Of a stretch of DNA of 64,000 bases, positions 29,739 through 64,000 are shown piece by piece. The stretch's first letter is position 1. Each line of letters opens with the position of its first letter. The notes below the pieces were generated by a model. That model saw only the letters and a program-made list of their open reading frames with translations. It was not told the DNA's origin and did not search any database. The translations under genes were made by a program, and so were the position numbers. This DNA is from Ophelia neglecta (lineage: Eukaryota), in the NCBI GenBank assembly GCA_965285935.1, contig OZ260661.1:112530001-112594000 (forward strand). Direction: 5' to 3'.

Positions 29739-32700
29739 CTAATAAAACAGTCCCAATAGCTTCATGTACCATTTCTTTTCATTAGATTTTTTCCTATTAA
29801 TATCGGGCATACAGTATGCCTTGCAACTGTCCTCTGTCCTAAAATTGTTGCTGTTGCCACGGCAACCCCCATAGATGAATGTTTTACACATTTTGCTGAG
29901 TGGGTCGTAGTGCCATCTCTCTATGCTGGCACGGCATCGCCCCGTCTCTGGCTCCTGAGCACACGCCTCTGCAAAAACAAAAACAAATACAATATAGGCC
30001 TATATAAAGGATTATCGGGGATAAGGGGAGAGTATATGATTCATAATTCAAGGGGGAGCTCAAGTATACGAGTTATGGATTTAAATCACCAAATAAACGT
30101 GCAAGAGTACTTCAATAATTTAATCGAGGTTCTTAACTGAAAGTAATCTAAAACGATTACCTCTTCTTCCGCTTACGACTACCATGTCGACCAACTTGGA
30201 TTTTGTCTTCGGTGGCCTGGGAGCACATTTGCAAATCTCACAACCGAGGTTGTCTTTCCTAAAGCCGAATTTACATTTCTTCAAACAGTTGCGTTCTGGG
30301 CATTTGTTTTTCTCTTCTTCCGGCGATGGTGCGCATTCACATTTATCACATCCATGCTCGTCCTTGGTAAACCCGTGTTCACAGTACATGTAACATGATG
30401 CCCTGGAACACTCGCGGCATTCACAGATTTCACACCCATTATCGTCCTCTTTAAACCCATGTTCACAATACATACGACATTGTACTTTGCTACATTCGAC
30501 TTCTGGTTCCGGTTCCGGGGCGCATTCACATTTATCACATCCTTCTTCGTCTTTGGTAAACCCGTGTTCACAGTGCATCCTGCACATAAAAGGGCTGCAT
30601 TGGTTACATTTACAAATTTCACATCCATTTTCGTCCTTCTTAAACCCATGTTGACAATACATACGACATTGTACTTTGCTACATTCGACTTCAGGTTCCG
30701 GTTCCGGGGCGCATTCACATTTATCGCATCCATGCTCGTCCTTGGTAAACCCGTGTTCACAGTACATGTAGCATGATGCCCTGGAACACTCGCGGCATTC
30801 ACAGATTTCACAACCATTATCATCCTCTTTAAACCCATGTTCACAATACATACGACATTGTACTTTGCTACATTCGACTTCTGGTTCCGGTTCCGGGGCG
30901 CATTCACATTTATCACATCCTTCTTCGTCTTTGGTAAACCCGTGTTCACAGTGCATCCTGCACATAAATGGGCTGCATTGGTTACATTTACAAATTTCAC
31001 ATCCATTTTCGTCCTTCTTAAACCCATGTTGACAATACATACGACATTGTACTTTGCTACATTCGACTTCTGGTTCCGGTTCCGGGGCGCATTCACATTT
31101 ATCACATCCATGCTCATCCTTGGTAAACCCGTGTTCACAGTACATGTAGCATGATGCCCTGGAACACTCGCGGCATTCACAGATTTCACACCCATTATCG
31201 TCCTCTTTAAACCCATGTTCACAATACATACGACATTGAACTTTGCTGCATTCGACTTCTGGTTCCGGTTCCGGGGCGCATTCACATTTATCGCATCCAT
31301 GCTCGTCCTTGGTAAACCCGTGTTCACAGTACATGTAGCATGATGCCCTGGAACACTCGCGGCATTCACAGATTTCACACCCATTATCGTCCTCTTTAAA
31401 CCCATGTTCACAATACATAAGACATTGTACTTTGCTGCATTCGACTTCTGGTTCCGGTTCCGGGGCGCATTCACATTTATCACATCCTTCTTCGTCTTTG
31501 GTAAACCCATGTTCACAGTGCATCCTGCACATAAAAGGGCTGCATCGGTTACATTCACAAATTTCACATCCATTTTCGTCCTTCTTAAACCCATGTTGAC
31601 AATACATACGACATTGTACTTTGCTACATTCGACTTCTGGTTCCGGTTCCGGGGCGCATTCACATTTATCACATCCATGCTCGTCCTTGGTAAACCCGTG
31701 TTCACAGTACATGTAGCATGATGCCCTGGAACACTCGCGGCATTCACAGATTTCACACCCATTATCGTCCTCTTTAAACCCATGTTCACAATACATACGA
31801 CATTGAACTTTGCTACATTCGACTTCTGGTTCCGGTTCCGGGGCGCACTCACATTTATCACATCCTTCTTCGTCTTTTGTAAACCCGTGTTCACAGAACA
31901 TCCTGCACATGACAGGGCTGCATCGGTTACATTCACAAATTTCACATCCATTTTCGTCCTTCTTAAACCCGTGTTGACAATACATACGACATTGTACTTT
32001 GCTACATTCGACTTCTGGTTCCGGTTCCGGGGCGCATTCACATTTATCACATCCATGCTCATCCTTGGTAAACCCGTGTTCACAGTACATGTAACATGAA
32101 GCCCTGGAACACTCGCGGCATTCACAGATTTCACATCCATTATCGTCCTCTTTAAACCCATGTTCACAATACATACGACATTGTACTTTGCTACATTCGA
32201 CTTCTGGCTCCGGTTCCGGGGCACATTCACATTTATCACATCCATACTCGTCTTTGGCAAACCCGTGTTCACAGTACATAAAGCAACTATATATTGGGCA
32301 TTGGTTGCACTCACAGATATCGCATCCATTGTCGTCCTTCTTAAACCCATGTTCGCAATACATACGGCACTGAACTCTGCTACATTCGACTACTGGTTCT
32401 GGTTCCGGGGCGCATTCACACTTATCACATCCCTGTTCGTCTTTCGTGAACCCGTGTTCGCAATACATCAGGCACGATACGGGGCTACATTCAGCTTCAG
32501 GAACGGAAGCACACTCACATTTATGACACCCATTATCATCCTTGACAAATCCATTTTCGCAAAACATCGCACACATTACAGGACTACATTCAGGTTCAGG
32601 GGCAGGGGCACATTTGCACTTATCACATCCGTTGTCATCCGTCTCAAATCCATGTTCGCAAAACATTGCGCACATTACTGGACTGCAATGGGGTCGTTCA

Positions 32701-35700
32701 GCGGTCATGCATTCGCACATGTCACAGCCTTGCTCATTTTTGACAAAACCATGTTCACAATGCATTAAACAATTGTTGATTGGGCATTCATTACATTGGC
32801 AAATATCGCAACCATTTGTGTCTTTCTTGTAGCCATGTTGACAATACATCCGACATTGCATTCTGCTGCAATCTGGTTCTGGCTGTGGTGCACATTCACA
32901 TTTGTCACACCCGTTTTCGTCTTTGACAAAACCATGTTCACAGAACATTGCGCACATAACAGGGCTGCATTCTGGTTCCGGCTGTGGCGCACAAACACAG
33001 AGTTGGCAACCGAGGCTGTTTGATCGATAGCCATGTTCACACTCTAACTCACATTCAAACTTAGCACATCCTACTGGTTGAGGTTCTAGCGCACATTCGC
33101 ACATCTCACAGCCCCTATCATCCCACATGTGACCGTGTTCACACTCAAGGTGACACACAAAGGTACCACATACATTATGCGGCCTCTGGGGAAGGAACTG
33201 TGCCGCACTCTCGTCAGGGTTGCACTCGCATGCAGGACAGCCGAACTGGTCGTGTTTAAAGCCATATTCACAGTACATATTGCAGGTTGGGGGACAGGCT
33301 AGAGGACGAGGCTCCGTGCCAGGTACCCGACACTGACAGCGGTCGCAACCAGAATGGTCCTTCACGTAACCATGCTCACAATGCATATAACACGAAGTAG
33401 GAGGACAGTTTGGTTCACGACAACGACAATTCTCACATCCTCGAGAGTCGGGAATCTTTTCGCAGTCTTCTGGGCAGTCAATGACCCCGCACCGTACCTG
33501 TTCTGGTGCGCAAGCACACATGTCACACCCGTTAACATCTTTCTGGAATCCATGCTCACAATGCATATAACACGAAGTAGGAGGACAGTTTGGTTTACGA
33601 CAACGGCAATTCTCACATCCTCGAGAGTCGAGAAACTTTTCGCAGTCTTCTGGGCAGTCAATGACCCCGCATCGTACCTGTTCTGGTGCGCAAGCACACA
33701 GGTCACACCCGTTAACATCTTTCTGGAATCCGTGCTCACAAAACATTGCACACATGACATCGCTGCATTCAGCCGGCGGTGGGGCACAGCGACAAATCTC
33801 TTCTCCTTTCCCGTCTAGCTGGAAACCAAACTCACAGTGAATAGCGCACTGAATCCTGGGTTGGTCGGCTGAGTGATTTCTGCACCTACAGACTTCGCAT
33901 CCAAAATCATCCTGCTGAAATCCGTGTCGGCAGAACATGGCGCATGCGATGGGCGAACAATGGGGCTCCTCCCGACATTCACATAATTCGCAGCCGTTAG
34001 CATCGTGCTGAAACCCGTGCTCGCAGAACATGAAGCAGGCAATGTCGGAGTTAGGACATGTGGGAGGATCATTACATTCGCAGATCTCGCAACCATTTTG
34101 GTCCATCTTAAAGCCGTGTTCGCAGAACATGTTGCACCGAGCAGGACTACATAATGTGGATCGTGGCGGGGCGTCCTTACACTGACAAAGGCTACATCCA
34201 TTCCTGTTCTGAACATAACCATGGGGGCAGTGCATTAAACATTGAAGGGGCGAACACTTAGGGGAGGAGCACTCACAAACATCACATCCGTCCTCGTCCT
34301 TCTTAAAGCCATGTTCACAGAACATAGCGCACCCGACCAGGGTACTACATTCATTTTCAGCTTCGATCTCGGCGCATTGGCAGATTTCACAACCGTTTTC
34401 ATCTTCGGCAAATCCCTGGTCACAATGCATTGCGCACTGTATGCGGTTGCAGTCAGGTTCTGGTTCGAAACACTCGCAAATCTCGCAGTCGTTTTCGTCC
34501 TTCTTAAAGCCTTGCGGACATGACATCAAACACTGGTTGTCCGGGCAAATGGCCATTACAGCAGGCTCTGTGTTACACACGCAGATATCGCATCCTCTGG
34601 CATTTTTTTGGAAGCCGTGTTCACAATATTTGCGACACATGTATATGCCACAAATCTCGTCCTTAGTGGCGCATTCGCATAGTTCACACCCTCTTCCATC
34701 CTTTTTGAAGCCGAATGGGCATTTCATGGCACAGTTAAGGACTGTAGGACACTGTCCGGCACATCGACAGAGAGGACATCCACTAGAATTTTTTTGGAAT
34801 CCGAAAGGGCAGTCCATATCACACATCACCGGTGGGCACATAGGAGGGTCAAGACACGCGCATGTGTCACAACCAGTGGCGCCATCTACTCTGCGTCCAT
34901 AGGGGCAGAAAATGCGGCATTCGGCATGTGGGCAAGCGAAGTTAGCGATTTTTCGGGATGACAGAGTGAGTGCAGCACATTCACAAGTGGCACATCCGCT
35001 TTTGTCAACCTGGAATCCTCCGGGACACTCCATCATACACTGAACTTCTGGGCAGGAGGCGTCTAAATCACATTCGCAGAGTGGGCAGTCCAACTGGTCA
35101 GTCTTATATCCCAAAGGGCAGTACATATGACACTGGAATGACTGGCAGTTGGGCGGTTCGCGGCATTGACAAGTGTCACAGCCAGTGTCGTCTACCATGA
35201 AACCATGCGGGCATTGATTAAGGCATGCGTTTGCCGGGCAACTGGCGCATTCACACAGGTTACAGCCAATGGAGTCTTTGCTTAAACCATATTCACAGTG
35301 CATGTCACACTCTATCTCAGGACAATGCTCACGAGTGGCCAAGGGAAAACGGTTGCAGGTGCAGGTCTCACAACCAGCATCGTCTATTGTGCGGCCAAAT
35401 TCGCAGTAGATTAAACAATGCTTCAGGGGACACTCTGAAGGAGGGTCTGCACATTCACACAAGTCACAGCCTCTTTCGTCTCTCTTCATACCGTAGGGAC
35501 AGTCCAGGAACTGGCACCCAGTCAAAGGACACGGCTCATCGGCACACTCGCAAATCTCGCAGCCGTGGTCGTCCATCCTGAAGCCATGTTCACAGTGCAT
35601 CAGGCAGGTGATTGGGGGACACTGGTGGGAGGAAGGTATAACAACATCAGACTCAATGCATTCGCAAATGTCGCAACCATTCTCATCTTTCTTCATCCCC

Positions 35701-38700
35701 AACTCGCAGTATTTTCTGCACTTTTTTAGAGAACATTCTACTTCAGGCTGGGACGAATCCCTGGTATTTGGGTCATCGTTACAGACGCATAACTCGCAGC
35801 CGTCCTGGTCTACCTTAAATCCATGTTCACAGAACTTTCTACACCTCTTTCGGTTGCAATGTGGCTTACATTCGCAGACGATACAACCATTTGCGTCCTG
35901 GCGAAATCCGTCCGGACATTCCATGAGGCATTGTATCTCTGGACATTGGGGTGCTGTGTCTGCGCACTCGCAAACGTCACATCCAAGGGCGTCTTTCTTT
36001 AACCCCTTTTCACAATCCATCAGACATGTTATTGGCGGGCATTGTTCCTCTACATTCTTCATTTTCTCATCCAGGGCAGTAACACCTAAATTGGTAGACG
36101 AAGAAAATAATAAAGGCATGCATTTTAAATATATTTACCGGCCAACGGCAATTAACAATATCCTGTTTGTCTTAAACACCCCGCAGCCATCCCCCAGCCC
36201 AACCGTCGCCTGTGCCATGGGCGTAACATATTATTCTTATGGTCGGCTGAGGTTTATGCTTTCTTACTGGACGTGTATACCAAATGGTTGGTTTGAAAAG
36301 TAGTTTAACTGCAATTAGATTTAATCGAACTTGCATTCATGGCAAGATAAGCAAAGAAGAAACCATAAAAATTACTTCTGTATTTTGTGTTCCCCATATG
36401 CAGTTTATATTTACTATGCATGGTTTATATAACCCATGTAAATATACTGTAAACAGACATTTATCTATAGAAGTTTACACAGCAGTGGAGGAAATGACTG
36501 ACCTACTTTAACTTCGGGGCCCCAACAATGCTTTAAAATAGTTTCAATCATACCTTTGCACTTGCGTTCGCAGCGTCCCCTGGAACCGAAATTGTTGTGG
36601 TTGCCTCCACAGCCGCCATAGTTGAAGACTCGACATTCTCCCAGAGAAGAGTCATAGTACCATCGGCGTTCAAATGACTCGCAACTTCCTTGATCGGGAT
36701 CCAAGCGACACCGTTCTTGGTCTGAAAGAAAGTCAATTAGATAATGCTGTCCAAGTAAACGATAATTTAAAGACGCTGGGTAGGATAACAAATAAAATTC
36801 AAATAACTATCCAATATTTACAAATATTAACTATTGATTATTATTGGAAAAGTAGTTTAATTCATTCTTTTGTAGCAAGCATACACCATTGCTGACCAAC
36901 AAGCTGTAGTAGATCAATGGTCCACCAGGCACATGCGCAATGCAAAAAAGCCAGCGTGCACAAACCTATCACTCTAGGAGAATCAGGATTGGGACCGGTT
37001 ATGCATTCTCGGGTACAAGTCGCTTCACTATCGAAACGATTGTCATTCCCTTCACATCCTCCATAGATGAACTGCTCGCAGCGGTTATAAGTTGTGTCAT
37101 AATACCACATCCGATTGTAAGCAAGGCATGGCCCGGGATCTGGCTGGTAGCGGCACGTGTGAAGCGTTCTGGTGTGGCGTCCTGTGAGTCAAATTGAGCA
37201 AGTAAGCAAGCCATAGTAGCAATTTGCCTTTAAGCAAGAAGCGATGCGCAAATATTATTCAATTATTTTCATAGCAAAAGCAACATGCATGAACTGCTTC
37301 AGTATATCCATATGACATCATATAAAAATCAATTTTACCATTAATGAAAGCAGCTACCATACTTCTATCTGTTATGCTACTTACACACCTAAAGGTTTGA
37401 CAAAGTCACCTAGATTTAGTTTTTACTTCTATGAATTTGGTATTACTGTAATGACGTTACATAAATTAATATGTGACATTGCGTGGATTTACGGCAGCCA
37501 TGCGGAGGAGGAAAAGCGAAGTAGTGTACATATAATATCATCGAGGCCCTTGGCTACACACTACTTAGATGATCAAATCTCAATCGGAGATGATACAAAT
37601 GTCTTAAAGTAGCATTTGCGAATTAAATTGTGATAAGCTAGGAATACAAGCAAAGACTATTGTGGCCCCTAATGTGCACGGAATCAAGCGATTTATTCGC
37701 GGCTACTCATGGGGTGCAAACAAGCCGTAGACGAAATTAATTGTGCCGAGGTTAGCCAGAAACACTGATTTATTCCCATTAGGTGCACATCAACTCCTAC
37801 CGCAATATTAGGCGATAATACATCCAGACAATTAGCCGCGTGTGCTTTAAACACCACGGTTGTCTTTTTACTTAAAATACAATGGTATATTGCTTTGATA
37901 CCTTAACATTATGTTGAGATTGTAAGATTCGAGGTTGTACAGAAAAAATCTTGTTCACCGTTTGCTGCAAATATTATCCGAAATGAAGGCACTACATTTA
38001 TAGCACAATTTCATAGAAGTAAGAACTGTTATACAGTGAAACCTGTGAATTAAGACCACAAAAGGGACTGGAAATGCTGGTCTGAATAGGAGGTGGTCTG
38101 TTTAGACAGGTTTATGTATATTGAAAGTGTGCATAATGGTCTTCATTCTAGTGGTCTGACTTGGCAGGTGGTCTGATTATAGAGGTGGTCTTTAAGGCAG
38201 GTTTCACTTCAGGGTGATGCATTAATCAGTGTCGAATATTCTTGAAACACATATCATGCTTGGAAAAAAATGATCAAGAACCCTTTACAGCAAACAGTGC
38301 AAGCCAACATGCTCAAGATCTGCCTAACTATAGTTTACTTTAGATTGTTTCGGTATCTCAATTGTAAAAAATAAATTCATTTGCCGCGGATATTCTCCAA
38401 CATCGTGCGTTTAAAACAAAGAACCTTTGATATTTGTCTAGAACCTTCACACCAAGGACAGATAGCATTACCAGTCCCACTTGAGTTTGGTACTTATAAT
38501 TATAATAACTATATGATATTTGCTGTACATTGCACTATATCAAGCCGGTACATCGGGACATGCGGGTATTTACAGGTATTTACATCTGATAAACAGTGAA
38601 GACTGTGAATTAAGACCTCCAAAGTGACTGGAAACCACTGGTCTGATTTGTGGTCTGAATTGGAAGGTGGTCTGATTATAGAGGTGGTCTTTAAGGCAGG

Positions 38701-41700
38701 TTTCACTGTATATATGTACATGTATATATATAAATTGAACTAGTTCAATGGCCAAGCTCTACATACCTTTGCCTCGGTGTTTCCTTGCCTGACTTGAGCC
38801 GCACTGAAAAGAAACAAGATATAAAGATCCAAATGAAAAAAAACTCGTGAAAGATGCATGAATAAAAACAAATTTTAAGGAGAATATCGTTTTCAACAAT
38901 AAAATGAACAGTAATGCAAAAGTACATTGAAGTATGTATTTCCATTAATTGGTAATTCACTGCACTAGATATTTTTAAAAAGAATTATTGCAGACCAGCA
39001 TCATGCTCGGTTACTTTGCCCGCCTGAACTTGAGGTTAACTATTTTGCTTAAGGGTTTGTTTAACCAACTAAAGGTAATGTTATATCTCATGTTATGCCT
39101 CATTCCAACTAAGCTCAATGAAAGGACTTAAAACTTAAAATTCTACAATAACACACGTTGCAGTAAAGTTCTTGGACTTAAATACGTGGTTTTTATCTGG
39201 GATATATCTAAAACAGTCTTTCGGACGAGCCAATATTACATCGCAAGAATTGACCAAACAGCTGTCAGTGACGTGAATAAATCGTTAGTTATTTTTAACG
39301 AAGGCAAGACGGTCAACACAACACATGTTTATTCTCATGCAGGCCTATCATATACCAGTAGAATTTGCAGTTGTTTTCCACGCTTGCCATTGTGACAGAA
39401 CTATAATGCCCTGGTATGAAGCTGAGGATCTGGTTTCTTTAATGTTATATGTTATAGAATTTCCTATTTTTGTCGAAAAATACAGCACGCTAGCTCACTC
39501 GTAGTGCTGAATTTAATCTGAAAAACGCTTTTCTGTCTCTCACCTGAGCGAAAATGAATAGCAAAATCAGTACCAGTACGTACAAGCTACAATGTGTTAC
39601 CTTATATGTTAGCACAAAGTACATAGAAATCTATTTACAGTGAAACCTGTGAATAAAGAGAACCAAAGGGACCGGAAAATACTGGTCTGATTGCAGAGGT
39701 GGTCTGTTATGACAGGCTATTTAACACTGAAAGTAAACTGGAAAGGCCTCATATAAGTGAGTTGTATTGACAGGTGGTCTGATTATAGAGGTGAATTTTA
39801 AGGCAGGATTCACTGTAATACTTCCACACATTGTGTGCTCGCCCCTATCAACCTGCCATGCTTACACCGGTAAGTTATCATCCTTACTAACTAATTACCT
39901 TGTAAGTAATTAACACTGTGGGCAGGGTGTCAATTAATTGCAATCTTAGGCTACAAATATAGGCTAATCATTAATGTAAAGGATCAAAAGTACGCAATAC
40001 ACACATAAATATAAATCGGTGACAAAGGTGCTAACTGACGTGTTGATATAATTCCTCCATATTTTACACTTCAGATAATCAATGCGATTAAACACTATTT
40101 AGGAAAATGCCATATTGTAAAAATAGGGAAATAAAAGTTAATATTAGACAGGTCACTAGTCTCCGACTTTGGATGTTATGCTTCAGGGCAGTACTCGATA
40201 TGTACCTACAGCAATCACTTCGCTCCCTCCCCCTGCTAGTCCTTGTCACCGTGAATTAATGTATTTAACTCTCTTTGTAGAAGCTGACTATGTGTCAAGG
40301 ACAGTGTGGCGTTGGAATTCAATTGCCGAACTCATATTTAGTGTTTTAATGTTATGGAGACAAAGAACATGTTCTACTTCACAACACGTAATTGCAGGAA
40401 ACGTTAATCATATATAAAATAAGAAATATTATTAAACATAAAATGGGTATATTCACTTCTAAAGAGGGAACATATAGCCTATCAGTTTTTTCAGAAACAA
40501 ATGTCGGTGGCTAATAGACACAATGAAATGTGAATAGCGAGTGCATCGCACACTATGAAACAATAAATTGATATTTTAACGTATAGTTTCATGTGTGTCA
40601 GTCTCCTGCAAAGTAGAGACAGGCCTTATTGCCGTTAACGTTTTCGTTGTGGCTTCACACTTCACTTCACACTTTTGATTTGTGAAAAAGTAATAGCAAT
40701 CTTTGTCCGGACTAAATAATTTGGCTGCCAGTAGCTCGGAATTTTAATTTACATATGGCTGGTGCATGTATTGTAACATGGAAGTGAATTTCTTGCCTAT
40801 TAGTAAAACGATCATGAATACCATATAGAAATAAAATGGAGAAGAAATATATACCAAACTAACCGAAAAAATTCTTTGTTGATGTAGGGGAGAGCGGGGC
40901 AATGTGATATTGTTGTGGTGAATATGGGAATAGGGATGGGAAGGGCCATGACGGGACTATTCTCATTTCGCCATGTAGTGTTTATTTTTTCCCCACTTAG
41001 GCTTTTTAATAACTATTCCATGCCACGGGAATTACCCCTCGTAAATCGAATGCATTCTCTTGAGGGCAAGTTGGACCAGAATGATACAAAAGGATGCAAC
41101 TCTAAAACATCATATAAAGAACAGAGCGTATCTTTGCAACGGTTTACTAAGGTACATAAAACCGAAATTTGCAATACGACATCATGTATAGTTAGGGCTG
41201 TTATATAAATGTAAGATCAAACATGCACCGGTAGGCCTATGTCACAAAAGGATAACCTGTTTTGCCTCACATTTTGTCCCACAGACGGGCCAAACCAAAA
41301 CGAGGCGTTTCAAGTTCCAGCTGGGTAAGGTTAGATATGTCTTTGCATCGCTTAAAGGTATATGAACACTTGCATGTTACGCCAGAAAAAAATTGACAGT
41401 GTTTTTCCGTCGACCCAGTAGCCAAGAGGAAAGCTCTTTCACTAATTTTATTCGGAATTGTTAATACGATTGAAAGCACCGTTCAAAATATATTCCGATA
41501 TGGTTTTTCATTGTTCTCAGTTCGTATATAAACAATATTATTTACAGCAATAAAAGCGTTTTGGTCATCTGTAGAACAAGAAGAAAAAAAATGACATGCC
41601 AAAAATATAAGGCATGTCATTTTTATGGTATCATACACACAGCATGGTTAAACAAACAATATGAATGAACGGGCTTGGCGGCGGCGGCGAGGGGGGGGGG

Positions 41701-42360
41701 GGGTAAAAAAATGCCGTTGTTTATGGTGATAAGTATATAGTTTCCTTGGTTTAATATGAGTACATTTTGTTATTCGCATGATTTATGTGCACTGGTTAAA
41801 CAAAGATAAGGTTGAAGTTGAACAGAGATTCATAAAACCCTGGGTTATCTTTGGTACAATTCAGCGCAGGGGATATTGGTGATAACTCCTCAAAGATAAG
41901 GGGCAACTTTGAACAATTGACTGAGGGCACTAAGATAAGACCAAAAATAGTCTAGTCCAAATCAGTGCATTTGGCCTACTCTAATCTTAGACAGCACCTC
42001 GATGACATTATAAACAATACCACACGCCTTTTTTATGCTGATTTGTGTTTCTTGCCAAGGATTCTGATTAAAACCTAAACATAATTATCTGTACACACTC
42101 GCTATATAACATTAGTTTTAATGTACTTTGGATGTTTAGAGGCTCGTTGTCAGAGTTTTCCCCTATCAAAAAGCCCAATACTTTTTAAATATATGTTTAA
42201 GGTAGAAATGAATATTTTTTTCAATAATGCCGATAAGCGAGAAAATGAAGCACAGGTGTACACACAGGACCAGAGGGATGGTATTAAAATGTGAATAGTA
42301 AAGAAGCAATCTTACCAAAACTCCAAGGAGCAATGCCACTGCTAGCAATTCTAGCTTCAT
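29739..42360 (-). CDS. Secreted giant multidomain protease-inhibitor-like protein: signal peptide, Kunitz x2, 60 antistasin-like repeats, Kunitz (about 2,206 aa)
   Basis: Exons 42360-42316 (MKLELLAVALLLGVL), 38803-38767 (CGSSQARKHRGK), 37181-36966 (Kunitz 1), 36721-36554 (Kunitz 2), 36085-30161 (5,925-nt antistasin array) and 29968-29739 (Kunitz 3, absent from the ORF track: CAQEPETGRCRASIERWHYD..FIYGGCRGNSNNF..C..YC). Total 6,621 nt, all GT-AG and in phase. Minus-strand AATAAA at 29498-29503. Confidence 0.9.
30333..32222 (-). repeat. Coding higher-order tandem array: ten 189-bp units (two antistasin repeats each) alternating as 378-bp AB-CD super-units
   Basis: Near-identical DNA units. Order along the protein: ABCD ABCD A'B ABCD ABCD AB. 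The 378/567-bp spacing of the shadow ORFs agrees. Confidence 0.93.
33369..33730 (-). repeat. 180-bp coding tandem duplication (60 aa) in the antistasin exon
   Basis: Sequence at 33369-33549 is repeated 180 bp later (CEHGFQKDVNGC..CGVIDCPEDCEK..CPPTSCYMH). Confidence 0.9.
38034..38209. mobile_element. CAGTGAAACCT-family MITE
   Basis: TA|CAGTGAAACCTGTGAATTAAGACCAC ... GTGGTCTTTAAGGCAGGTTTCACT. Confidence 0.8.
38594..38708. mobile_element. CAGTGAAACCT-family MITE (internally deleted)
   Basis: CAGTGAAGACTGTGAATTAAGACC ... GGTCTTTAAGGCAGGTTTCACTG|TA. Shares a long block with the copy at 38034. Confidence 0.8.
39638..39815. mobile_element. CAGTGAAACCT-family MITE with a TA TSD
   Basis: TA|CAGTGAAACCTGTGAAT ... 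AAGGCAGGATTCACTG|TA. Confidence 0.82.
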
Positions 42361-44180
42361 TTCACCAAATTATGAAGTTTTCAGTGGCTTGGTTCCTGAC
42401 TGCTGAACAGTTCATATGAAAAAAACACAGGGTTGTCACTAGTAGACAGAGCAAGTTAAAAGTTCAGCAATATGGTGTATTTGTAGTACGCCTAATGGTA
42501 ATTTTGATGAAGCGGTCTTCAAGAACCCCGAGTATGTTGTGCGCTTGCCACAGTGGACAGCACGGTATTTATCCTCAAATGCTTGGATTGTTTACCGGAT
42601 GTTAGCCACTACAATCTATGATTCACATGCCAGAAAGCTGACATCTACTGACACGGGCACTGACACCTGTATGCTAGCGGATAGCTGAAGAGAAGCTTTC
42701 GCGCCTCTGTAGAGTGAACTCTGACCCGTGACGCAAGTGCCGCGATGAATCCGGATTTGGAGATGCCCGTAACACCTTGCGGCGAACAATGGACGGTTAA
42801 TAATGTCCGACCTGATAACCTCGGCAAACTTAAAGAAAAAAAACCTGTTATCGCTCGAAAGGGTTAGTCGGTGAGGAGCAGGCCTACCCAACTATACAGC
42901 CCTATAAATACTCGTATAATACTTAGTTAGGCCTGCAGACGACACGGGGCAAGGATCAGCTGTGACTTGTCTTCAGAAACTGAATAAACTAAACAAATGG
43001 CCTGGGAATGCAAAACAGACAGGACAAAAAACCTGGGATGTTGCGCAGACTTTGACAAAAAAAACAGTAGCAGAACACTAGGGATTGGGAAATATAATAT
43101 GCACAATATTGAAAATGTATTGTAGCAAACATATGATAAGTAAAGCAACACCTAAACAGTTCTACCGCTAGCGGTATTGTTTTTATTAAAATTGCATACC
43201 TCGTCCAAGACAATTATTAATTAGGTTTATGTTTAGTTTGAATGTCATGTTGCAAATCTGGTGTGATGTTTTCCTATTATATTATTCATTTAAACCACAC
43301 AAGGAGACACATGATTGTTTGCAGCTGTTTGGAGATGTTTCCAAATTAAGTGCATGCTCAATGAGAGGCGGCAAGTTCTAGTCAATAAAAGTGCTGCTGT
43401 TTTAAACATAGATAATAGTGATAAATCAGTGGTCATCGTTTTACCATGTGCAGTTAATATTATTGAACCAGAAAACAGACACAGATATTCGAAACTTGGA
43501 CTTCATCACTTGAGCAGAAACCCAGTGAGCTACTCATTTTAACCTATATACGAGTTGATTATACAGTTTTGACCCAAGTTTGACTTGACTGTTCAACTCT
43601 GGTTGACCCCAACTTAACTTGTCCAAAAGCCCCGGGGTTAAACCAAATTTCGATCAACCCCTATGCCAGGGAACCCTATTGCTGACGACATGTTGCAAAT
43701 AACAACGGATACCATATAATATAACACTGTGAAATACATTGAATTCAATAAACTATGCACACGTTGGGTAAGATCAATCCATGATTTTCAAACTATCAAC
43801 TAGGATGTTTTTATGTTTATGACTTTAGAGCATACTGTATAATTAAACAGGTTTTTGTTGTGCCCCCCCCCCCCCCCTCACACACACCCACAAGAGCAGA
43901 CGATTGGCACCAATGTCTCGAGGACCAGTGACACTTGGCAGCTGACACGGTTCACTTTACTCAAGGATGCATATGTAGAGCTGGAGTGTGCCATAATAGG
44001 TGGGCCCAATGCAGTTGTGCGTTCACATACACGCCCCCAAATTTTTGACTGCTTTGTTTTTCTCGAATTAAGTAGTCCAATCTATTAGGAACAAATTGAA
44101 AACAGTCACTGAGAAAAACATCCTCTTTTCTAGAGGATAGCAATAGGTTTACACGGGATGTGCCACCTGATGTTTAGGTT

Positions 44181-44331
44181 TAGTGAAACTACATTGGAAA
44201 TCACCTGTGTAATAAGATCACCTGCCCACTAAGGTCACTAAATTATAGCCCAATCTCCATATATGCTTGGGTTAAGTGACCTAGCTGCCTATTCCAGACC
44301 CTTGGCTGACCCGACTAGATATGTTTCACTC
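44181..44331. mobile_element. Degenerate CAGTGAAACCT-family MITE
   Basis: AGTGAAAC..TCACCTGTGTAATAAGATCACCTGCCCACTAAGGTCA..ATGTTTCACT, collinear with the copy at 29158. Confidence 0.6.
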
Positions 44332-46065
44332 TATATAATGTTAACTGACGTATATTTTCATAAAAGATATATAGTATAATTGCAAGAGTCAATTTATTCA
44401 GCCGATTATAAGCAAACCATCTGGAATACAGATATGGCGCTTGGAAAACTGTCCTGTCAATCTTTGTTTATAAAAGTTGAAATTAGTAAAAACGGTATCA
44501 TAAAATTCACAACAGTGTTGAGACTTTTGGTTCGTTGTTAAATGATTCAATGTGCACAATCATTTTGTTGTTTTAAACATATTGCCTACACGAGGATGCG
44601 AATTGGGAGTGATTTGAATATGTTTTTTAGTAAAAGTGATCAACAGATTCATATTCTATTTATTATATGATGGTTTGATTTTGATTTTTTACAATACAGC
44701 TTTGCAGCTAATTGGAAGAAGATAATAATTCTTTCAACATATGCAATGCGTAGAATTTCACGCATCTTAAATTATAAATATTATACCCAAACAAGACTTA
44801 TAAGATGCAATTGTCAAATAACAATAACAAGATAACATTTATGTCCTGGTTCATGTGTATATGTAATTAAATTAAATCGTACAGCAGGATATTGGGTAGA
44901 TGACAGATAACGCCTCTTTCTTTTCAAGTCTTATCTCAACACATGCTTAAAAAGGATTATTGATAAGGTCGGAACGTTCAATGACTTATCTATATGTCCT
45001 CAGGAATATGAGTGGGCATCGATAGATTACCAGCAAATATTGTGAATGATAATATCCTTAATTAATTATGCTATATTAATATACATGTCTTATACGATAG
45101 TATTATACATAAGTGAACTTCATCCTGCCCATATCTTCAAGAACTTAATTGATTTTTAAAAACAAATTTATCCATATTTTGTTTGTTGCGTAATTCATTA
45201 ATGGAAATTCACATGTTGTAGTAAGTCAGACGTTTATTGTCAGTTAATTCCAAGTCAAATAAAAAGTTAAAGTCGAAGTACGGTTTGATCAATACATAGT
45301 TTATTTATCGTGATAAACTGTACACGGCTGACAAGCCTGTCACATACCTGCCTGTAGACATGAAATCACTTTCTTTAACATTAGCATCTCCAAAACTGAC
45401 TTAAAATTGGCGTGATAAAAAGCAAAACTTAATGCAGTGCAGGCCTACTTTAAAAAATGTGTAACACAATACTTCAATATATCCAATTTGATTGGTTTTA
45501 CTTTGCCAGAATTTTAAAAGATTCTTCTAAGACTAGAGTACCTTAGGCTAATGAAAGTCAAATACCATTGGTATATCTAAATGAACATGTACAGTCAAAA
45601 AGTACAAGCACTACTATCCCGGTAAATGCTCTGGCATTTAAAGCAGAGTACTGAGGCTGCTGAGGTGAGATCAGACAAACACACATCCTAAGGTGATGCT
45701 TTAAAAAACTCATTATACTTTCTTATCACAGTAAAACGCCGGCAAAATCTTCTTTCCTTTCAAATTGACCGACAAAGATTGATACAGACAGAACAATGTT
45801 ATTCATATCAAAAAACGATACTTAAATCATTTCATCAAATCCCGCTGGTCTGTACAATGCACAATACTACTACCATCTATGCGAATGTGACCGTGAAAAA
45901 GCAATCAATGCTGTGAGAACTAAAAACCAAAGTTAAGTCATCGTTAAACACACGGAATTGTTTTTTTTCCAATATCACAATGCTGCTTATCTATACAAGT
46001 TCACCACGAACTATATAATCATTTTATTGCTGTTGCCATGGTTATATATATTTAATGGAAGGCCA

Positions 46066-49000
46066 TCAGCTTTCTTCGTCTTTTTCCAGCGCTGGATTGT
46101 CCACTCCTAACTCTTCATCGGATACTAGGTCGGCTGCAACATAAGTTAAAGGTCATGGTTTATAACATGGACGCTTAGCGCTGCAAAATTCCAAATATCC
46201 ATGAGAACAGAATCAGAGGATAGCAGATGAAGACAACAAGCCTTACTTGTATCTGCCGTACGCGGGTCAAGGACTTCCGGGTCATTTCGGCTGAACCTGA
46301 CCGACTTTCGGCGACTTTTACCACGTGGCCTTCGACCTGCATTTCTTGTAAGAGGTCGTGGTCGCAAGGGGCGCTTTCTCCTAGAAAACATATTTGAGAA
46401 TATGTGATGAATAGATTTTAAAACTCGTACGAACCTGTCATTGTTAGCCTGATTAGATACCGAAATACTATCGAATTAGCTGCAGGTATCAAAGCATTCT
46501 TATAATAGAAGGTGGTAGGTTGATTCTGTCTGCATTCGACATTTAAATATTCGCTAAGTGCAAAACGTGAATATGAAACGTGTGTATTATATTTGATACT
46601 TACTTTGCCTGGTATGTCCGCCAGACAATTTCAACGACCAATAAAAGGAAGAGCAAACTAAAGATCACGGACAGCACCCCGATCACCACTGAGATAAAAG
46701 TAAATAATACTTGGATAGAAATCAATCACCATCCAGACTTCTCACAATATGTCTCCGATTGTAATTACAAACAGCACATTGAGGTCATTGATAAGTTTTT
46801 GAGACGCAGGGAATCTAGGTGTCGCCAAATGGAAGCATACACTATAAATTACTCTGGGTGAAAAAATCGGAAACTGTGTTAATGTGTTAATTAAGAGTCA
46901 ACGAGGCATTCGGAAAAACCGACAAGTTTAATTGTAGCTTCCTAAAAACCTCACGTACTTCTGATAATATTTTTACACTGTTGAGTCTAATCTATAGACT
47001 ACTGGCTACTGAGAAAAAAAAATTATGTATTGTTCGTAGACTTCTTTAAGGCATTTGACATTATAGAACGGCACATTCTCTTCCATAATTAACTCGGGAC
47101 TTCATTGCAGGGTCATGGATACGTTAAAGGTTTTTATCATAAAACCAAATTCCGTTTAAAATGCAAGGAAAGGCTAAGAACATTGGTCGAAAACACGATC
47201 GGTGTCAACCAAGGACTAAGGTTAGCATCGACTTGTTTAGGAATATGGGTGGTGTCGAAAAGTGGTGTCTCTCTTTTGGAGAGAGTGCACCTGCAGTATC
47301 GCAAACAAGAACTGGGTGCCAAATCATCTACCTGAACTCTGGCTATTTATGGTGAATGTGGTGAAAGATTTTGTGACGTTTTGGCTTATGGTCTAAAATG
47401 TGGACAAATTATATAAAAAATAGCAATTATTATTGATATCATGAATTGGAGTATTCCATAGAATCGGGCACTAAAATATTGACTATATGTGAAAAACGAA
47501 GCAAATTTATAGTTATAATTGATAATCTGAAGCTGATTTTGTTGATTATCTCAAAACTATGAAATGTCTCTCCGGCCATTTTGGCATTAATCGGACGATA
47601 TATATTATTAATGGTCCAACAGTAGTGTGATCTCTGGTGGTTTTGTCAGCTAGTCACTTTTTTGTGTGGGCGGTGGTCATTACGGGGAAAGACATAGAGA
47701 CATTGATGTAGAATGTCTGTTTGTTCGCATTGCTAGCTTGTGTTGTGTAAATATATACTGCATGCAATATTCTTGTGATGTGTCGTTAGTAACTATTTAC
47801 CAATGGTATATATTAAACAGAAATAAAAAATAAACTTAAACTTGAACTTGTACCCCCCCCCCCCCCCGCCCCGCCCTATCCTCGTAGAACATATGATTGT
47901 GTCTTCAAAAAATGAGACTAGTTCGGCCATGACAAAAGAATTGACAAGTAGGCCTATCGTACGATAGATATAGGAATAATACTTACACCCCCACGGAGTG
48001 TCACAGATGTTATCTGTACACCTGGAAAATAAACACTTCACAATCAGGACATGTCACCTCCTCAGATATTAGCACGATTTTAAATTATAAGAGTAAATAA
48101 CGAAGAAATAAAAACAATCTTTTAATTTTCCTTTTAGAGGATAAAACGTTGAAAAATGAGACCAACCCATAACGGCGTTTTCGGAATGCTAATATGAGCC
48201 TTGGTTTCTCTGCAAGATAGATGTGCAAAAGTGTGAAAAGGAGAAAGTTGTCCGAGTGACGGAACGAGGCTCCCCGATGATCGTGCGGTGGATAATTTTT
48301 CTAATACTACTGAGGTGTATGCAACTATTAACTTGTAAACAAGAAACCCCATGCATAAGAAAATATCACACTGAGTTTTATACTTTCCTGTGTTTTACCA
48401 AAATGAGAGCACCAGCTAAACTTTGTGAATAAGTGCAATGTAGATATAAAGATCAAGAAAAAGGGTGTTACATCAATGAAGTGGACAGTTCTGAAAATAC
48501 ATGCAAAGGAAAACTATCATGACAGCAATGGTGTTAAATGAATGTGACTAAACCAAGAGAGAGAGAAACTAAAACCTTTGTGGATGCTGTTGCAACGATA
48601 ATTAATCATATTTATAACATTTTAAAATGTGTTAAAGGGCATGCAATAATTGGTTGTGCAACACAAAATTTGACATCTGGATTCCACCAATTGAATTTAC
48701 CCGGAAGATCTCTGCGCCGATGGTCCTGATATATTTCTGTTGGAAATTGTTTGGTTATCACCAGTAGTGTTACTGTATATAGTGGATGTTTCCAGCGGTA
48801 CCGATGAAGATTGGTCTACTGTAGCATTTTCATCCAGCACAGTCCATGAACCAAATGGAGTTTCAGTTTTGGAAGTCGACTGCGCATCAGTGACTGTCAT
48901 ATTGAGGGTAGTAGTATCTGCAGTTTTCGAATTCTGAGCAGATGGTGTCGAAATGCTTCTGCTGGAAGTTGTTTGGGTATTGCCAGTAGTGTTATCGTAC

Positions 49001-63851: not shown

Positions 63852-64000
63852 CTGGGGAGTCACATGAGTAAAAGTACAACGATTAAAACAAAACTAGCAC
63901 ACTTTCAGCCAACTGCAAAGAGCAAGTTAGTTGTTCTATATTCAAGTGAAAATTTCTTCTTTTATTTCTTAGCAGATCAGGGGAGAGTGATTCTTGGAAG

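What the first reader, a model, noticed from the sequence alone, without database searches (positions are those of the whole stretch)
29739..42360. Kunitz-capped, 60-repeat antistasin megaprotein: a candidate single-chain protease-inhibitor library
Seen: manual splicing gives signal peptide, Kunitz, Kunitz, 60 six-Cys antistasin-type modules (C-x3-6-C-P1-x2-3-C..G[FY]..D..GC..C.C) in one 5.9-kb exon, then a third Kunitz the ORF track misses. That is about 2,206 aa and more than 370 Cys. Established: in antistasin-family inhibitors the residue after the second Cys is P1, and the characterised leech/earthworm/Hydra members I know carry only a few modules. Here the predicted P1 spans R, L/M/F/Y, A, D/E, H, N, Q and P. 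Inference: either a multivalent broad-spectrum inhibitor covering trypsin-, chymotrypsin- and elastase-like proteases, or a disulfide-crosslinked, protease-resistant structural secretion (cocoon, tube, mucus) reminiscent of Cys-rich leech cocoon protein. I do not recognise this architecture at this scale.
Basis: partly seen in the sequence, partly recalled or inferred. Interest (0 to 1): 0.9.

Follow-up and report, generated by a model that had tools for sequence, protein, structure and literature searches.

The report
Giant Kunitz-antistasin protease-inhibitor-like gene
A probable annelid genome carries an intact, selection-maintained gene for a roughly 2,200-residue secreted protein made of three Kunitz and sixty antistasin protease-inhibitor modules; it is an extreme member of an already known kind of mixed multi-head inhibitor, and whether it inhibits proteases or mainly builds a tough secretion is untested.

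Summary
On the minus strand, one 5,925-nt exon (30161-36085) encodes 59 intact six-Cys antistasin modules plus one decayed four-Cys module (Pfam Antistasin, 58 stretches, E=0). Two Kunitz exons lie upstream and one downstream (Pfam E 2e-18 to 9e-21). All four exons join through GT-AG introns in phase 1.

It joins Kunitz 1 in frame only through a 37-nt candidate exon (38767-38803). The six-exon model is 6,621 nt, or 2,206 codons.

No RNA data exist: the three public runs that hold the locus are genomic DNA. Support for a working gene is indirect. Five 63-residue repeat units are identical in protein yet differ at 2-7 synonymous sites per pair (pooled pN/pS 0.24).

An AlphaFold di-module superposes on hirustasin, bdellastasin and guamerin at 1.0-1.5 A, and the P1 column aligns.

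The architecture is not unique. This genome has an array of at least 74 antistasin modules with a terminal Kunitz, and a 17-Kunitz/22-antistasin array. Smaller Kunitz-antistasin proteins and arrays of about 30 modules exist elsewhere, all uncharacterised.

The "library" reading is overstated, because the last 22 modules amplify a few types. Verdict: a new, extreme member of a known kind.

The scan's only other notes here are this stretch's own note and one on its internal repeat.

The parts
42316..42360 (-). Candidate exon 1: ATG plus a 15-residue hydrophobic start of a signal peptide (MKLELLAVALLLGVL). Donor is TTG|GTAAGA in phase 0.
   Evidence: Sequence read. It is the best signal-peptide-like ATG exon in 37182-50000. 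There is no RNA support.
38767..38803 (-). Candidate 37-nt exon 2 (CGSSQARKHRGK plus 1 nt). It supplies a small-residue cleavage region (SQA) and converts phase 0 to phase 1.
   Evidence: It is the only strong candidate in a scan of 37182-42315. It has a long pyrimidine tract plus CAG acceptor and an AAG|GTATGT donor. It lies in a single-copy DNA contig (table 8). It is predicted only.
36966..37181 (-). Kunitz exon 1, 216 nt, phase 1-1. The residue at the BPTI P1 position is Leu.
   Evidence: Pfam PF00014 E 2.4e-18. Splice sites read and checked. A weaker alternative donor in the same phase lies at 36996.
36554..36721 (-). Kunitz exon 2, 168 nt, phase 1-1. The residue at the P1 position is Glu, which is atypical.
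   Evidence: Pfam PF00014 E 2.9e-18. Splice sites.
30161..36085 (-). Giant exon of 5,925 nt, phase 1-1. It holds 59 intact and 1 decayed antistasin modules, and Met follows P1 in 47 of the 59.
30331..32469 (-). Tandem 189-nt (63-residue, two-module, 12-Cys) repeat of about 11 copies inside the giant exon, with a four-module higher order.
   Evidence: TRF gives period 189, 11.3 copies and 84% matches. Unit comparison: type-A units are identical in protein but have 2-7 synonymous differences per pair.
33713..33826 (-). Decayed module, with 4 of the 6 Cys left, in the 38-residue gap between modules 22 and 23.
   Evidence: gap of 38 residues. Sequence read.
29739..29968 (-). Kunitz exon 3 (terminal), entered in phase 1. 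The reactive loop is G-R-C-R-A-S (P1 Arg). A basic tail follows, then stop TAG at 29739-29741.
   Evidence: Pfam PF00014 E 8.7e-21. Splice site and stop read. The loop aligns with HAI-1 Kunitz domain 1, and the best PDB match is the annelid tri-Kunitz SmCI. It is 48% identical to the terminal Kunitz that follows antistasin modules in P0141.

Best explanation
This is a real, intact gene under purifying selection. It belongs to a spiralian, probably annelid, genome and encodes a secreted, acidic protein of about 2,206 residues and about 245 kDa.

The predicted layout is signal peptide, two Kunitz domains, a rod of 60 antistasin modules, and a terminal Kunitz domain. It is the largest annotatable member of a lineage-expanded family of mixed Kunitz/antistasin arrays.

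The most likely mode of action is a polyvalent canonical (standard-mechanism) serine-protease inhibitor deposited in an extracellular secretion such as mucus, tube lining, cuticle surface or egg case. Many heads present an exposed Cys-P1-Met loop to the S1 pocket of trypsin-like (P1 Arg), chymotrypsin-like (Leu, Tyr, Phe, Met) and elastase-like (Ala) proteases. The roughly 188 disulfides expected from the Cys count would make the chain itself protease-resistant.

Shown: domain identity, fold, exon phases, and selection on the coding sequence. Inferred: secretion, the exon joins, inhibition, and the site of deposition.
For: Domains:
- Pfam Antistasin E=0 with 58 stretches.
- Three Kunitz exons, E 1e-18 to 1e-21.

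Reactive loop:
- phmmer aligns the modules to antistasin 1skz (E 2.4e-9), bdellastasin and guamerin. The residue after the second Cys lies on their proven P1.
- An AlphaFold2 di-module has pLDDT 84.6.
- The top eight Foldseek PDB hits are all antistasin-family inhibitors. Single modules fit at rmsd 1.0-1.5 A with 45-57% identity.
- 49 of 59 P1 residues are R, L, Y, A, F or M, the classic S1 ligands.
- The Kunitz 3 loop G-R-C-R-A-S matches HAI-1 Kunitz 1 (G-R-C-R-G-S) and resembles BPTI.

Gene integrity:
- All internal junctions are GT-AG.
- The four domain exons are all phase 1, and the six-exon sum is exactly 2,207 codons.

Selection:
- Units 39, 43, 49, 53 and 57 have 0 nonsynonymous and 2-7 synonymous differences per pair.
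- Pooled pN/pS is 0.24.

Co-occurrence of unrelated inhibitor folds in relatives:
- Kunitz with antistasin in single ORFs (P0046, P0035, P0038, P0084, P0053, P0048).
- TIL, antistasin and Kunitz together (P0125).
- WAP with antistasin (P0014).
- This argues that inhibition is the shared selected property.

C-terminal Kunitz after an antistasin array recurs in P0141 (48% identity) and in the paralogous array in this genome.

Literature: mixed Kunitz/antistasin/WAP inhibitors are known (BmSPI56, PMC3278429).
Against: - There is no transcript evidence. The only public runs holding the locus are genomic DNA.
- The 5' end rests on a predicted 37-nt exon.
- No inhibition assay exists for any six-Cys-only module of this subfamily.
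- Antistasin-like domains also occur in non-inhibitory proteins such as CRIM1 (from my own knowledge).
- Ten P1 residues (D, E, N, Q, H, P) fit no common protease.
- Modules 24 and 26 have lost the G-F/Y..D motif.
- Two-residue linkers would block simultaneous occupancy (inference).
- P1 is not hypervariable relative to other loop positions.
- Antistasin arrays have been found in structural materials: leech cocoon wall, limpet shell matrix, sea-star footprints and mussel byssus (PMC7851590, PMC3374290, PMC9382459, PMC6508894).
Confidence: 0.6

Rival explanations
1. The protein is primarily structural. It would be a disulfide-locked, protease-resistant bead-on-a-string fibre of a secreted material such as tube, cocoon, cuticle coat, adhesive or mucus. 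The inhibitor-like loops would be a legacy of the domain's origin, with inhibition contributing little.
For: - Extreme length and 18% Cys.
- The last third consists of amplified copies, five of them identical in protein, which suggests selection for bulk or length rather than diversity.
- Very short linkers.
- The 63-residue, 12-Cys repeat unit.
- Documented antistasin-repeat proteins in the leech cocoon wall (PMC7851590, PMC12838937), the Lottia shell matrix (PMC3374290), sea-star adhesive footprints (Sfp8, PMC9382459) and Perna byssus (PMC6508894).
Against: - Every domain type joined to these arrays in relatives (Kunitz, WAP, TIL) is an inhibitor fold rather than a typical matrix domain.
- Kunitz 3 keeps a textbook trypsin-inhibitor loop.
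- Most P1 residues are good S1 ligands.
- Selection preserves whole-module sequence, not only the Cys and Gly scaffold.
- No cross-linking motifs or unpaired Cys are evident in intact modules. All 59 have an even, ordered six Cys.
Confidence: 0.25
2. The protein is a non-inhibitory extracellular binding or regulatory protein. Like CRIM1, it would use antistasin-like modules as spacers or ligand-binding units, for example for growth factors, metals or glycans.
For: - Antistasin-like domains occur in CRIM1 (my own knowledge).
- They also occur in large VWC- or Ig/FN3-containing proteins found here: P0014, P0015 and P0162.
- Metal binding has been suggested for a byssal antistasin-like protein (PMC6508894).
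- There is a basic stretch after the predicted signal peptide.
Against: - Pfam finds no VWC, IGFBP, Ig, FN3 or transmembrane part in this gene. Only Antistasin and Kunitz are found.
- All Cys sit in the conserved disulfide pattern, leaving none free for metal binding.
Confidence: 0.08
3. The gene model is wrong or the locus is not functional. The Kunitz exons would belong to other transcripts, or the array would be an unexpressed, recently expanded coding satellite.
For: - No RNA data are available.
- The 5' join needs a predicted micro-exon.
- Retaining the last intron would end the frame 14 codons after the 30161 donor, at the stop 30120-30122, without Kunitz 3.
Against: - The open frame runs for 1,974 codons.
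- pN/pS is 0.24, with protein-identical copies that differ synonymously.
- All junctions are phase-1 GT-AG and sum to a whole number of codons.
- The same Kunitz-then-antistasin and antistasin-then-Kunitz order is seen in continuous ORFs on short contigs. These may be transcript-derived, but that was not verified.
Confidence: 0.07

Closest known systems
Leech antistasin-family inhibitors (antistasin, hirustasin, bdellastasin, guamerin; MEROPS I15, Pfam PF02822)
   Same: - The six-Cys unit C-x4-C-P1-x2-C-x10-C-x2-C-x-C is shared.
- The predicted fold fits at rmsd 1.0-1.5 A.
- The P1 column is the same.
- The G-F/Y..D..G-C motif is present.
   Different: - The leech domains have 10 Cys, with an extra N-terminal four-Cys subdomain that is absent here.
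- Leech proteins have 1-2 domains (4 in MCRA) against 60 here.
- The residue after P1 is Val or Ile in the leech inhibitors but Met in 47 of 59 modules here.
Hydra antistasin and oligochaete multi-domain antistasin-like proteins (2-6 repeats; PMC7851590)
   Same: They are tandem repeats of 25-26 residues with six Cys and no N-terminal subdomain. They are secreted and come from animals that do not feed on blood.
   Different: This gene has ten times more modules, is capped by Kunitz domains, and encodes the whole array in one exon.
Mixed-type compound inhibitors, e.g. silkworm BmSPI56 (Kunitz 1 / antistasin 3 / WAP 2; PMC3278429), and the unnamed Kunitz-antistasin proteins P0046, P0038, P0048 and P0116 found here
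   Same: Kunitz and antistasin units sit in one secreted chain. P0116, P0076 and P0035 share the Cys-x-Met-x-Cys loop. P0141 shares the terminal Kunitz and basic tail.
   Different: Those proteins have 3-8 antistasin units against 60 here. Some relatives (P0035, P0084, P0063) carry a C-terminal membrane anchor, which this gene lacks.
Antistasin-repeat proteins of secreted materials: leech cocoon protein Tcp, sea-star footprint protein Sfp8, Lottia shell-matrix WAP/antistasin proteins, Perna byssal ALP
   Same: They are long, Cys-rich, secreted arrays of antistasin-like units deposited outside the body.
   Different: Partner domains differ: EGF/notch-like in Tcp, and WAP with FAMeT in Sfp8 and Lottia. 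Pfam finds none of these here. Module numbers are far lower.
SmCI, the tri-Kunitz inhibitor of the annelid Sabellastarte magnifica (PDB 4bd9)
   Same: It is the best solved-structure match of Kunitz 3 (E 1.9e-37 summed over three domains). It is a multi-head Kunitz inhibitor from an annelid.
   Different: SmCI has Kunitz domains only and no antistasin array. Its carboxypeptidase inhibition depends on its own N-terminus, which was not examined here.

Membership tests
Antistasin domain family (Pfam PF02822 / MEROPS I15) | The profile HMM match exceeds the curated cut-off. | tested here: met
   Score 1284 bits against a cut-off of 21.2, with 58 stretches.
Antistasin domain family (Pfam PF02822 / MEROPS I15) | Six ordered Cys with conserved spacing, plus the Gly-aromatic and Asp..Gly-Cys motifs. 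| tested here: met
   59 intact modules, 51 of them with the exact 26-residue spacing. Cys columns and Gly13 are invariant, and Gly20 is present in 49 of 51.
Antistasin domain family (Pfam PF02822 / MEROPS I15) | Fold of the protease-binding subdomain of solved inhibitors. | tested here: met
   The AF2 model has pLDDT 84.6. The top 8 Foldseek hits are 1skz, 5ubm, 1hia, 3bg4, 1c9t, 1bx8, 1bx7 and 1c9p, with single-module rmsd 1.0-1.5 A for the six single-domain inhibitor hits. E-values are weak (0.02-0.3) because the domain is tiny.
Antistasin domain family (Pfam PF02822 / MEROPS I15) | Disulfide connectivity 1-4, 2-5, 3-6. | not testable with these tools
   Model coordinates are not exposed, so connectivity is only inferred from the fold match.
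Leech-type 10-Cys antistasin domain (antistasin, hirustasin) | An N-terminal four-Cys subdomain precedes the six-Cys subdomain. | tested here: not met
   Linkers of 2-17 residues contain no Cys. The modules are of the Hydra/oligochaete six-Cys type.
Antistasin-type inhibitors (functional class) | Tight-binding inhibition of a serine protease at the Cys-P1 bond. | not testable with these tools
   This needs an enzyme assay.
Kunitz/BPTI family (Pfam PF00014 / MEROPS I2) | HMM match, the six-Cys pattern and a reactive loop after Cys2. | tested here: met
   Three exons with E 2.4e-18, 2.9e-18 and 8.7e-21. P1 is Leu, Glu and Arg respectively. The Kunitz 3 loop aligns with HAI-1 Kunitz domain 1 and with BPTI.
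Mixed-type compound inhibitor (Kunitz and antistasin in one chain) | Both domain types are translated in a single polypeptide. | tested here: inconclusive
   All junctions are GT-AG and phase-compatible, and relatives have both types in one ORF. No RNA covers this locus.
Leech cocoon protein Tcp (antistasin/notch-like fusion) | An EGF/notch-like domain alternates with each antistasin-like domain. | tested here: not met
   Pfam reports only Antistasin in the giant exon.
CRIM1-like proteins | IGFBP and VWC domains plus a transmembrane anchor around the antistasin-like units. | tested here: not met
   None is found by Pfam in any exon. The C-terminus after Kunitz 3 has no hydrophobic span.

The most novel reading that the evidence does not exclude
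The protein is a true polyvalent "protease sponge". Dozens of heads on one 2,206-residue chain would each be active, covering at least three specificity classes. It would be laid down in the worm's external secretion as a stoichiometric sink for microbial and predator proteases. The near-invariant Met after P1 would act as an oxidation-sensitive switch on binding. Together with the paralogous arrays of at least 74 modules and of 17 Kunitz plus 22 antistasin units, this would be an undescribed lineage-specific defence system, and by far the most multi-headed protease inhibitor known.
Probability: 0.2. Interest if true: 0.7.

Novelty: new member of a known kind. Interest (0 to 1): 0.42.

Why it matters
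If the heads are active, this would be the most multi-headed protease inhibitor on record, with 63 heads. From my own knowledge, LEKTI has 15.

It would also be a ready-made natural series of antistasin loops with different P1 residues on one scaffold. That would be useful for understanding how small disulfide-rich inhibitors tune specificity, and how secreted materials are protected from degradation.

It also documents intra-exon amplification of a 63-residue unit under strong purifying selection.

If the protein is only structural, it adds a new extreme to the known use of inhibitor folds as building blocks of marine secretions. Either way, the family (Cys-P1-Met loop, Kunitz caps) is undescribed in the literature I could search.

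Tried and rejected
1. RNA evidence. The look-up of sequencing runs found only three runs from one sample. Their word share of 0.81-0.83 looked like exon-only coverage. However, read laying showed even coverage of the introns, so they are genomic DNA. No splice junction could be tested.

2. Direct join of the ATG exon to Kunitz 1. Rejected because phase 0 meets phase 1. Other ATG exons with phase-1 donors in 37182-50000 were weak or created a stop.

3. Species identification.
- A stop-free piece of mitochondrial COX1 gave only unnamed hits.
- HSP70 gave at best 78-79% identity to bivalves and 77% to the annelid Owenia, which indicates only a spiralian.
- Notes by other agents call the genome annelid.

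4. Complex prediction of a di-module with Streptomyces griseus trypsin was not folded, because the tool does not pair eukaryote and microbe chains. This gives no evidence either way.

5. P1 hypervariability as a sign of an arms race. Rejected, because the entropy of P1 (2.85 bits) equals that of several non-loop positions.

6. The idea that 60 modules is unmatched. Rejected, because the same genome has at least 74 modules in one array. Among the best 150 of 794 library representatives the maximum was 37 by my regex or 31 by Pfam.

7. The joined, spliced protein was never submitted to any tool.
Full report
**What is there**

The feature lies on the minus strand. The ORF listing shows a 1,999-codon ORF at 30120-36119. 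Its translation is an uninterrupted run of Cys-rich units of about 26 residues. Pfam scores it as Antistasin (PF02822) with E=0 at 1284 bits in 58 stretches, and finds nothing else.

A regex for C-x(2-8)-C-P1-x(2-3)-C-x(8-13)-C-x(2-3)-C-x-C finds 59 intact modules. A decayed sixtieth module with four of the six Cys left lies in the 38-residue gap between modules 22 and 23.

Stop-free segments on the same strand contain three Kunitz domains. Two are upstream and one is downstream. Pfam PF00014 gives E 2.4e-18, 2.9e-18 and 8.7e-21 for them. The window contains no N.

**Gene model**

Reading the junctions gives these exons:
- Kunitz 1: 36966-37181
- Kunitz 2: 36554-36721
- giant exon: 30161-36085 (5,925 nt)
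- Kunitz 3: 29739-29968, ending in TAG

Every intron is GT-AG, and all four exons start and end in phase 1. This is the classic arrangement of shuffled extracellular domains.

That donor is in phase 0, so it cannot be joined to Kunitz 1 directly.

A scan of the intervening 5.1 kb found one strong bridging exon at 38767-38803. It is 37 nt long, with a long pyrimidine tract, a CAG acceptor and an AAG|GTATGT donor. It encodes a small-residue signal-peptide cleavage region followed by a basic stretch.

With this exon the six exons sum to 6,621 nt, which is exactly 2,206 codons plus stop. This 5' part is prediction only.

I did not submit the joined protein to any tool. All searches were made exon by exon by reference.

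**Is it expressed?**

No RNA run holds the locus. The three public runs that do hold it come from one sample. When laid on 35900-41899 they cover exons and introns evenly, so they are genomic DNA. The splice model therefore rests on sequence logic and on relatives.

The indirect evidence for a working gene is strong. The 63-residue (189-nt) two-module units of the C-terminal third (TRF) were compared codon by codon.
- Units 39, 43, 49, 53 and 57 are identical in protein but differ from each other at 2-7 synonymous sites.
- Over all unit pairs, pN/pS is 0.24.
- The only amino-acid change among the six type-A units is Arg to Leu at the P1 position of module 47.

The synonymous differences also show that the copies are not an assembly artefact.

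**What the modules are**

phmmer against PDB sequences aligns the modules to antistasin (1skz, E 2.4e-9), bdellastasin, guamerin and hirustasin. The residue after the second Cys falls on their experimentally known P1: Arg in antistasin, Lys in bdellastasin and Met in guamerin.

An AlphaFold2 model of a di-module was built on an alignment of 46 di-modules from this gene. Its mean pLDDT is 84.6. Its eight best Foldseek matches in the PDB are all antistasin-family inhibitors. Single modules fit at rmsd 1.0-1.5 A and 45-57% identity. The E-values are weak because the domain is only about 30 residues.

The modules correspond to the six-Cys, protease-binding subdomain only. The four-Cys N-terminal subdomain of the leech proteins is absent, as in Hydra and oligochaete antistasin-like proteins (PMC7851590).

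P1 residues are R19, L11, A8, Y8, D2, H2, N2, F2, P2, Q1, M1 and E1. P1 is variable, at 2.85 bits in the older modules, but no more so than several other positions. The residue after P1 is Met in 47 of 59 modules. This differs from the Val or Ile of the leech inhibitors. It is shared by the paralogues and by relatives in other species.

Kunitz 3 has the loop G-R-C-R-A-S. This aligns with the matriptase-inhibiting Kunitz 1 of HAI-1. Its best solved relative is SmCI, a tri-Kunitz inhibitor of the annelid Sabellastarte. Kunitz 1 has Leu at P1 and Kunitz 2 has Glu.

**Context in this genome**

A six-frame Pfam search of the whole 762-Mb assembly found two more arrays on the same chromosome. After fetching them:
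- Locus A (C1:71312077-71331901, minus strand) has at least 74 antistasin modules spread over many exons with a 2.46-kb period. A single Kunitz exon follows them.
- Locus B (C1:68305569-68320425, plus strand) alternates 17 Kunitz and 22 antistasin units.

The window's gene is therefore one of a family and is not the largest array. It is unusual in carrying all 60 modules in one exon.

**Context elsewhere**

A full HMMER scan of 1.84 billion representative proteins found 794 relatives. The largest are uncharacterised predictions:
- a crinoid protein of 5,095 residues that mixes antistasin units with Ig, FN3 and thyroglobulin domains;
- a hemichordate protein with 31 antistasin, 17 WAP and 16 VWC domains;
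- a crinoid protein with 29 antistasin and 8 VWC domains.

No protein in the best 150 exceeds 37 modules by my regex.

Kunitz and antistasin units occur together in several small unnamed proteins. Some have a signal peptide and an N-terminal Kunitz, some a C-terminal Kunitz, and some a membrane anchor. One also carries a TIL domain. The terminal Kunitz plus basic tail of P0141 is 48% identical to Kunitz 3. These proteins lie on short contigs that are nearly filled by the ORF, which suggests transcripts, but their organisms are not named.

**Literature**

- Characterised multimeric antistasins have 2-6 domains. A four-domain leech protein was reported in 2026 as the first multimer with confirmed activity (PMC7851590, PMC12838937).
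- Mixed Kunitz/antistasin/WAP inhibitors are known from silkworm (PMC3278429).
- Antistasin arrays occur in the leech cocoon wall, limpet shell matrix, sea-star adhesive footprints, limpet mucus and mussel byssus (PMC7851590, PMC3374290, PMC9382459, PMC7333891, PMC6508894). In those settings they are discussed as stabilising or defensive components.

**Organism**

The best named HSP70 matches are bivalves (78-79%) and the annelid Owenia (77%). One close relative cluster contains a Capitella fragment. Notes by other agents call this genome annelid. I treat "annelid" as probable, not shown.

**Interpretation**

I favour a secreted polyvalent canonical inhibitor embedded in an external secretion (confidence 0.6). 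The reasons are:
- the reactive-loop geometry and P1 chemistry are kept;
- Kunitz 3 is a textbook inhibitor head;
- whole-module sequences are under selection;
- the partner domains across the family are always inhibitor folds.

The structural reading (0.25) is kept alive by several points:
- the sheer length;
- the amplification of protein-identical units;
- the two-residue linkers, which preclude full occupancy;
- the known presence of such arrays in secreted materials.

The two readings are not exclusive.

The "library" idea is overstated. Diversity is concentrated in modules 1-36, and the last 22 modules repeat a few types.

**Verdict**

This is an extreme new member of the known class of mixed multi-domain inhibitor-like proteins. 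It belongs to an undescribed family expanded in this lineage. Its function is untested.

Noticed in passing
G000:C1:71312077-71331901 (minus strand; loci L014, L018, L015, L019): A second antistasin mega-array lies in the same genome. It has at least 74 six-Cys modules in many exons with a 2.46-kb period. The P1 pattern P-A-M-R-M-M-P-A-M-M repeats, Met follows P1, and one Kunitz exon (P1 Arg) lies at the 3' end.
   Followed up: partly
G000:C1:68305569-68320425 (plus strand; loci L016, L020, L017): A third locus alternates 17 Kunitz and 22 antistasin units. Most of its Kunitz copies have Glu at the P1 position, like Kunitz 2 of the window gene.
   Followed up: partly
window 31419-31421 (minus strand; P1 codon of module 47): The only amino-acid difference among the six otherwise protein-identical type-A repeat units is Arg to Leu at the predicted P1 position.
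   Followed up: partly
window 30161-36085 and relatives P0116, P0076, P0035, P0046: Met directly after P1 (Cys-x-Met-x-Cys) is nearly invariant in this gene, in its paralogues and in Kunitz-antistasin proteins of other species. The solved leech inhibitors have Val or Ile there. The reason is unknown.
   Followed up: partly
window about 37900-38300, 38500-38740 and 39500-39900: Very high-copy repeats, with contig depth in the thousands to hundreds of thousands against about 10-30 elsewhere, sit in the long intron upstream of Kunitz 1. They are presumably transposable elements.
   Followed up: no
window about 50500-63900, minus strand: The upstream neighbour on the same strand is a multi-exon gene of EB-module and EGF-like repeats (Pfam PF01683, E 1.5e-45 for 59119-61131). 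I assume it is a separate gene, but no RNA shows where it ends.
   Followed up: partly
window 3500-3963 (+) and 5619-5953 (-): An inverted pair of segments carries the same short tandem repeat and gives similar Cys-containing pseudo-ORFs on opposite strands. It is probably the two arms of a repetitive element.
   Followed up: no
window 36724: All three DNA runs read A where the assembly has G. On the coding strand this turns the Kunitz 2 acceptor CAG into TAG, which is still a valid acceptor. Several other single-base differences in the introns suggest that the runs and the assembly represent different haplotypes.
   Followed up: no
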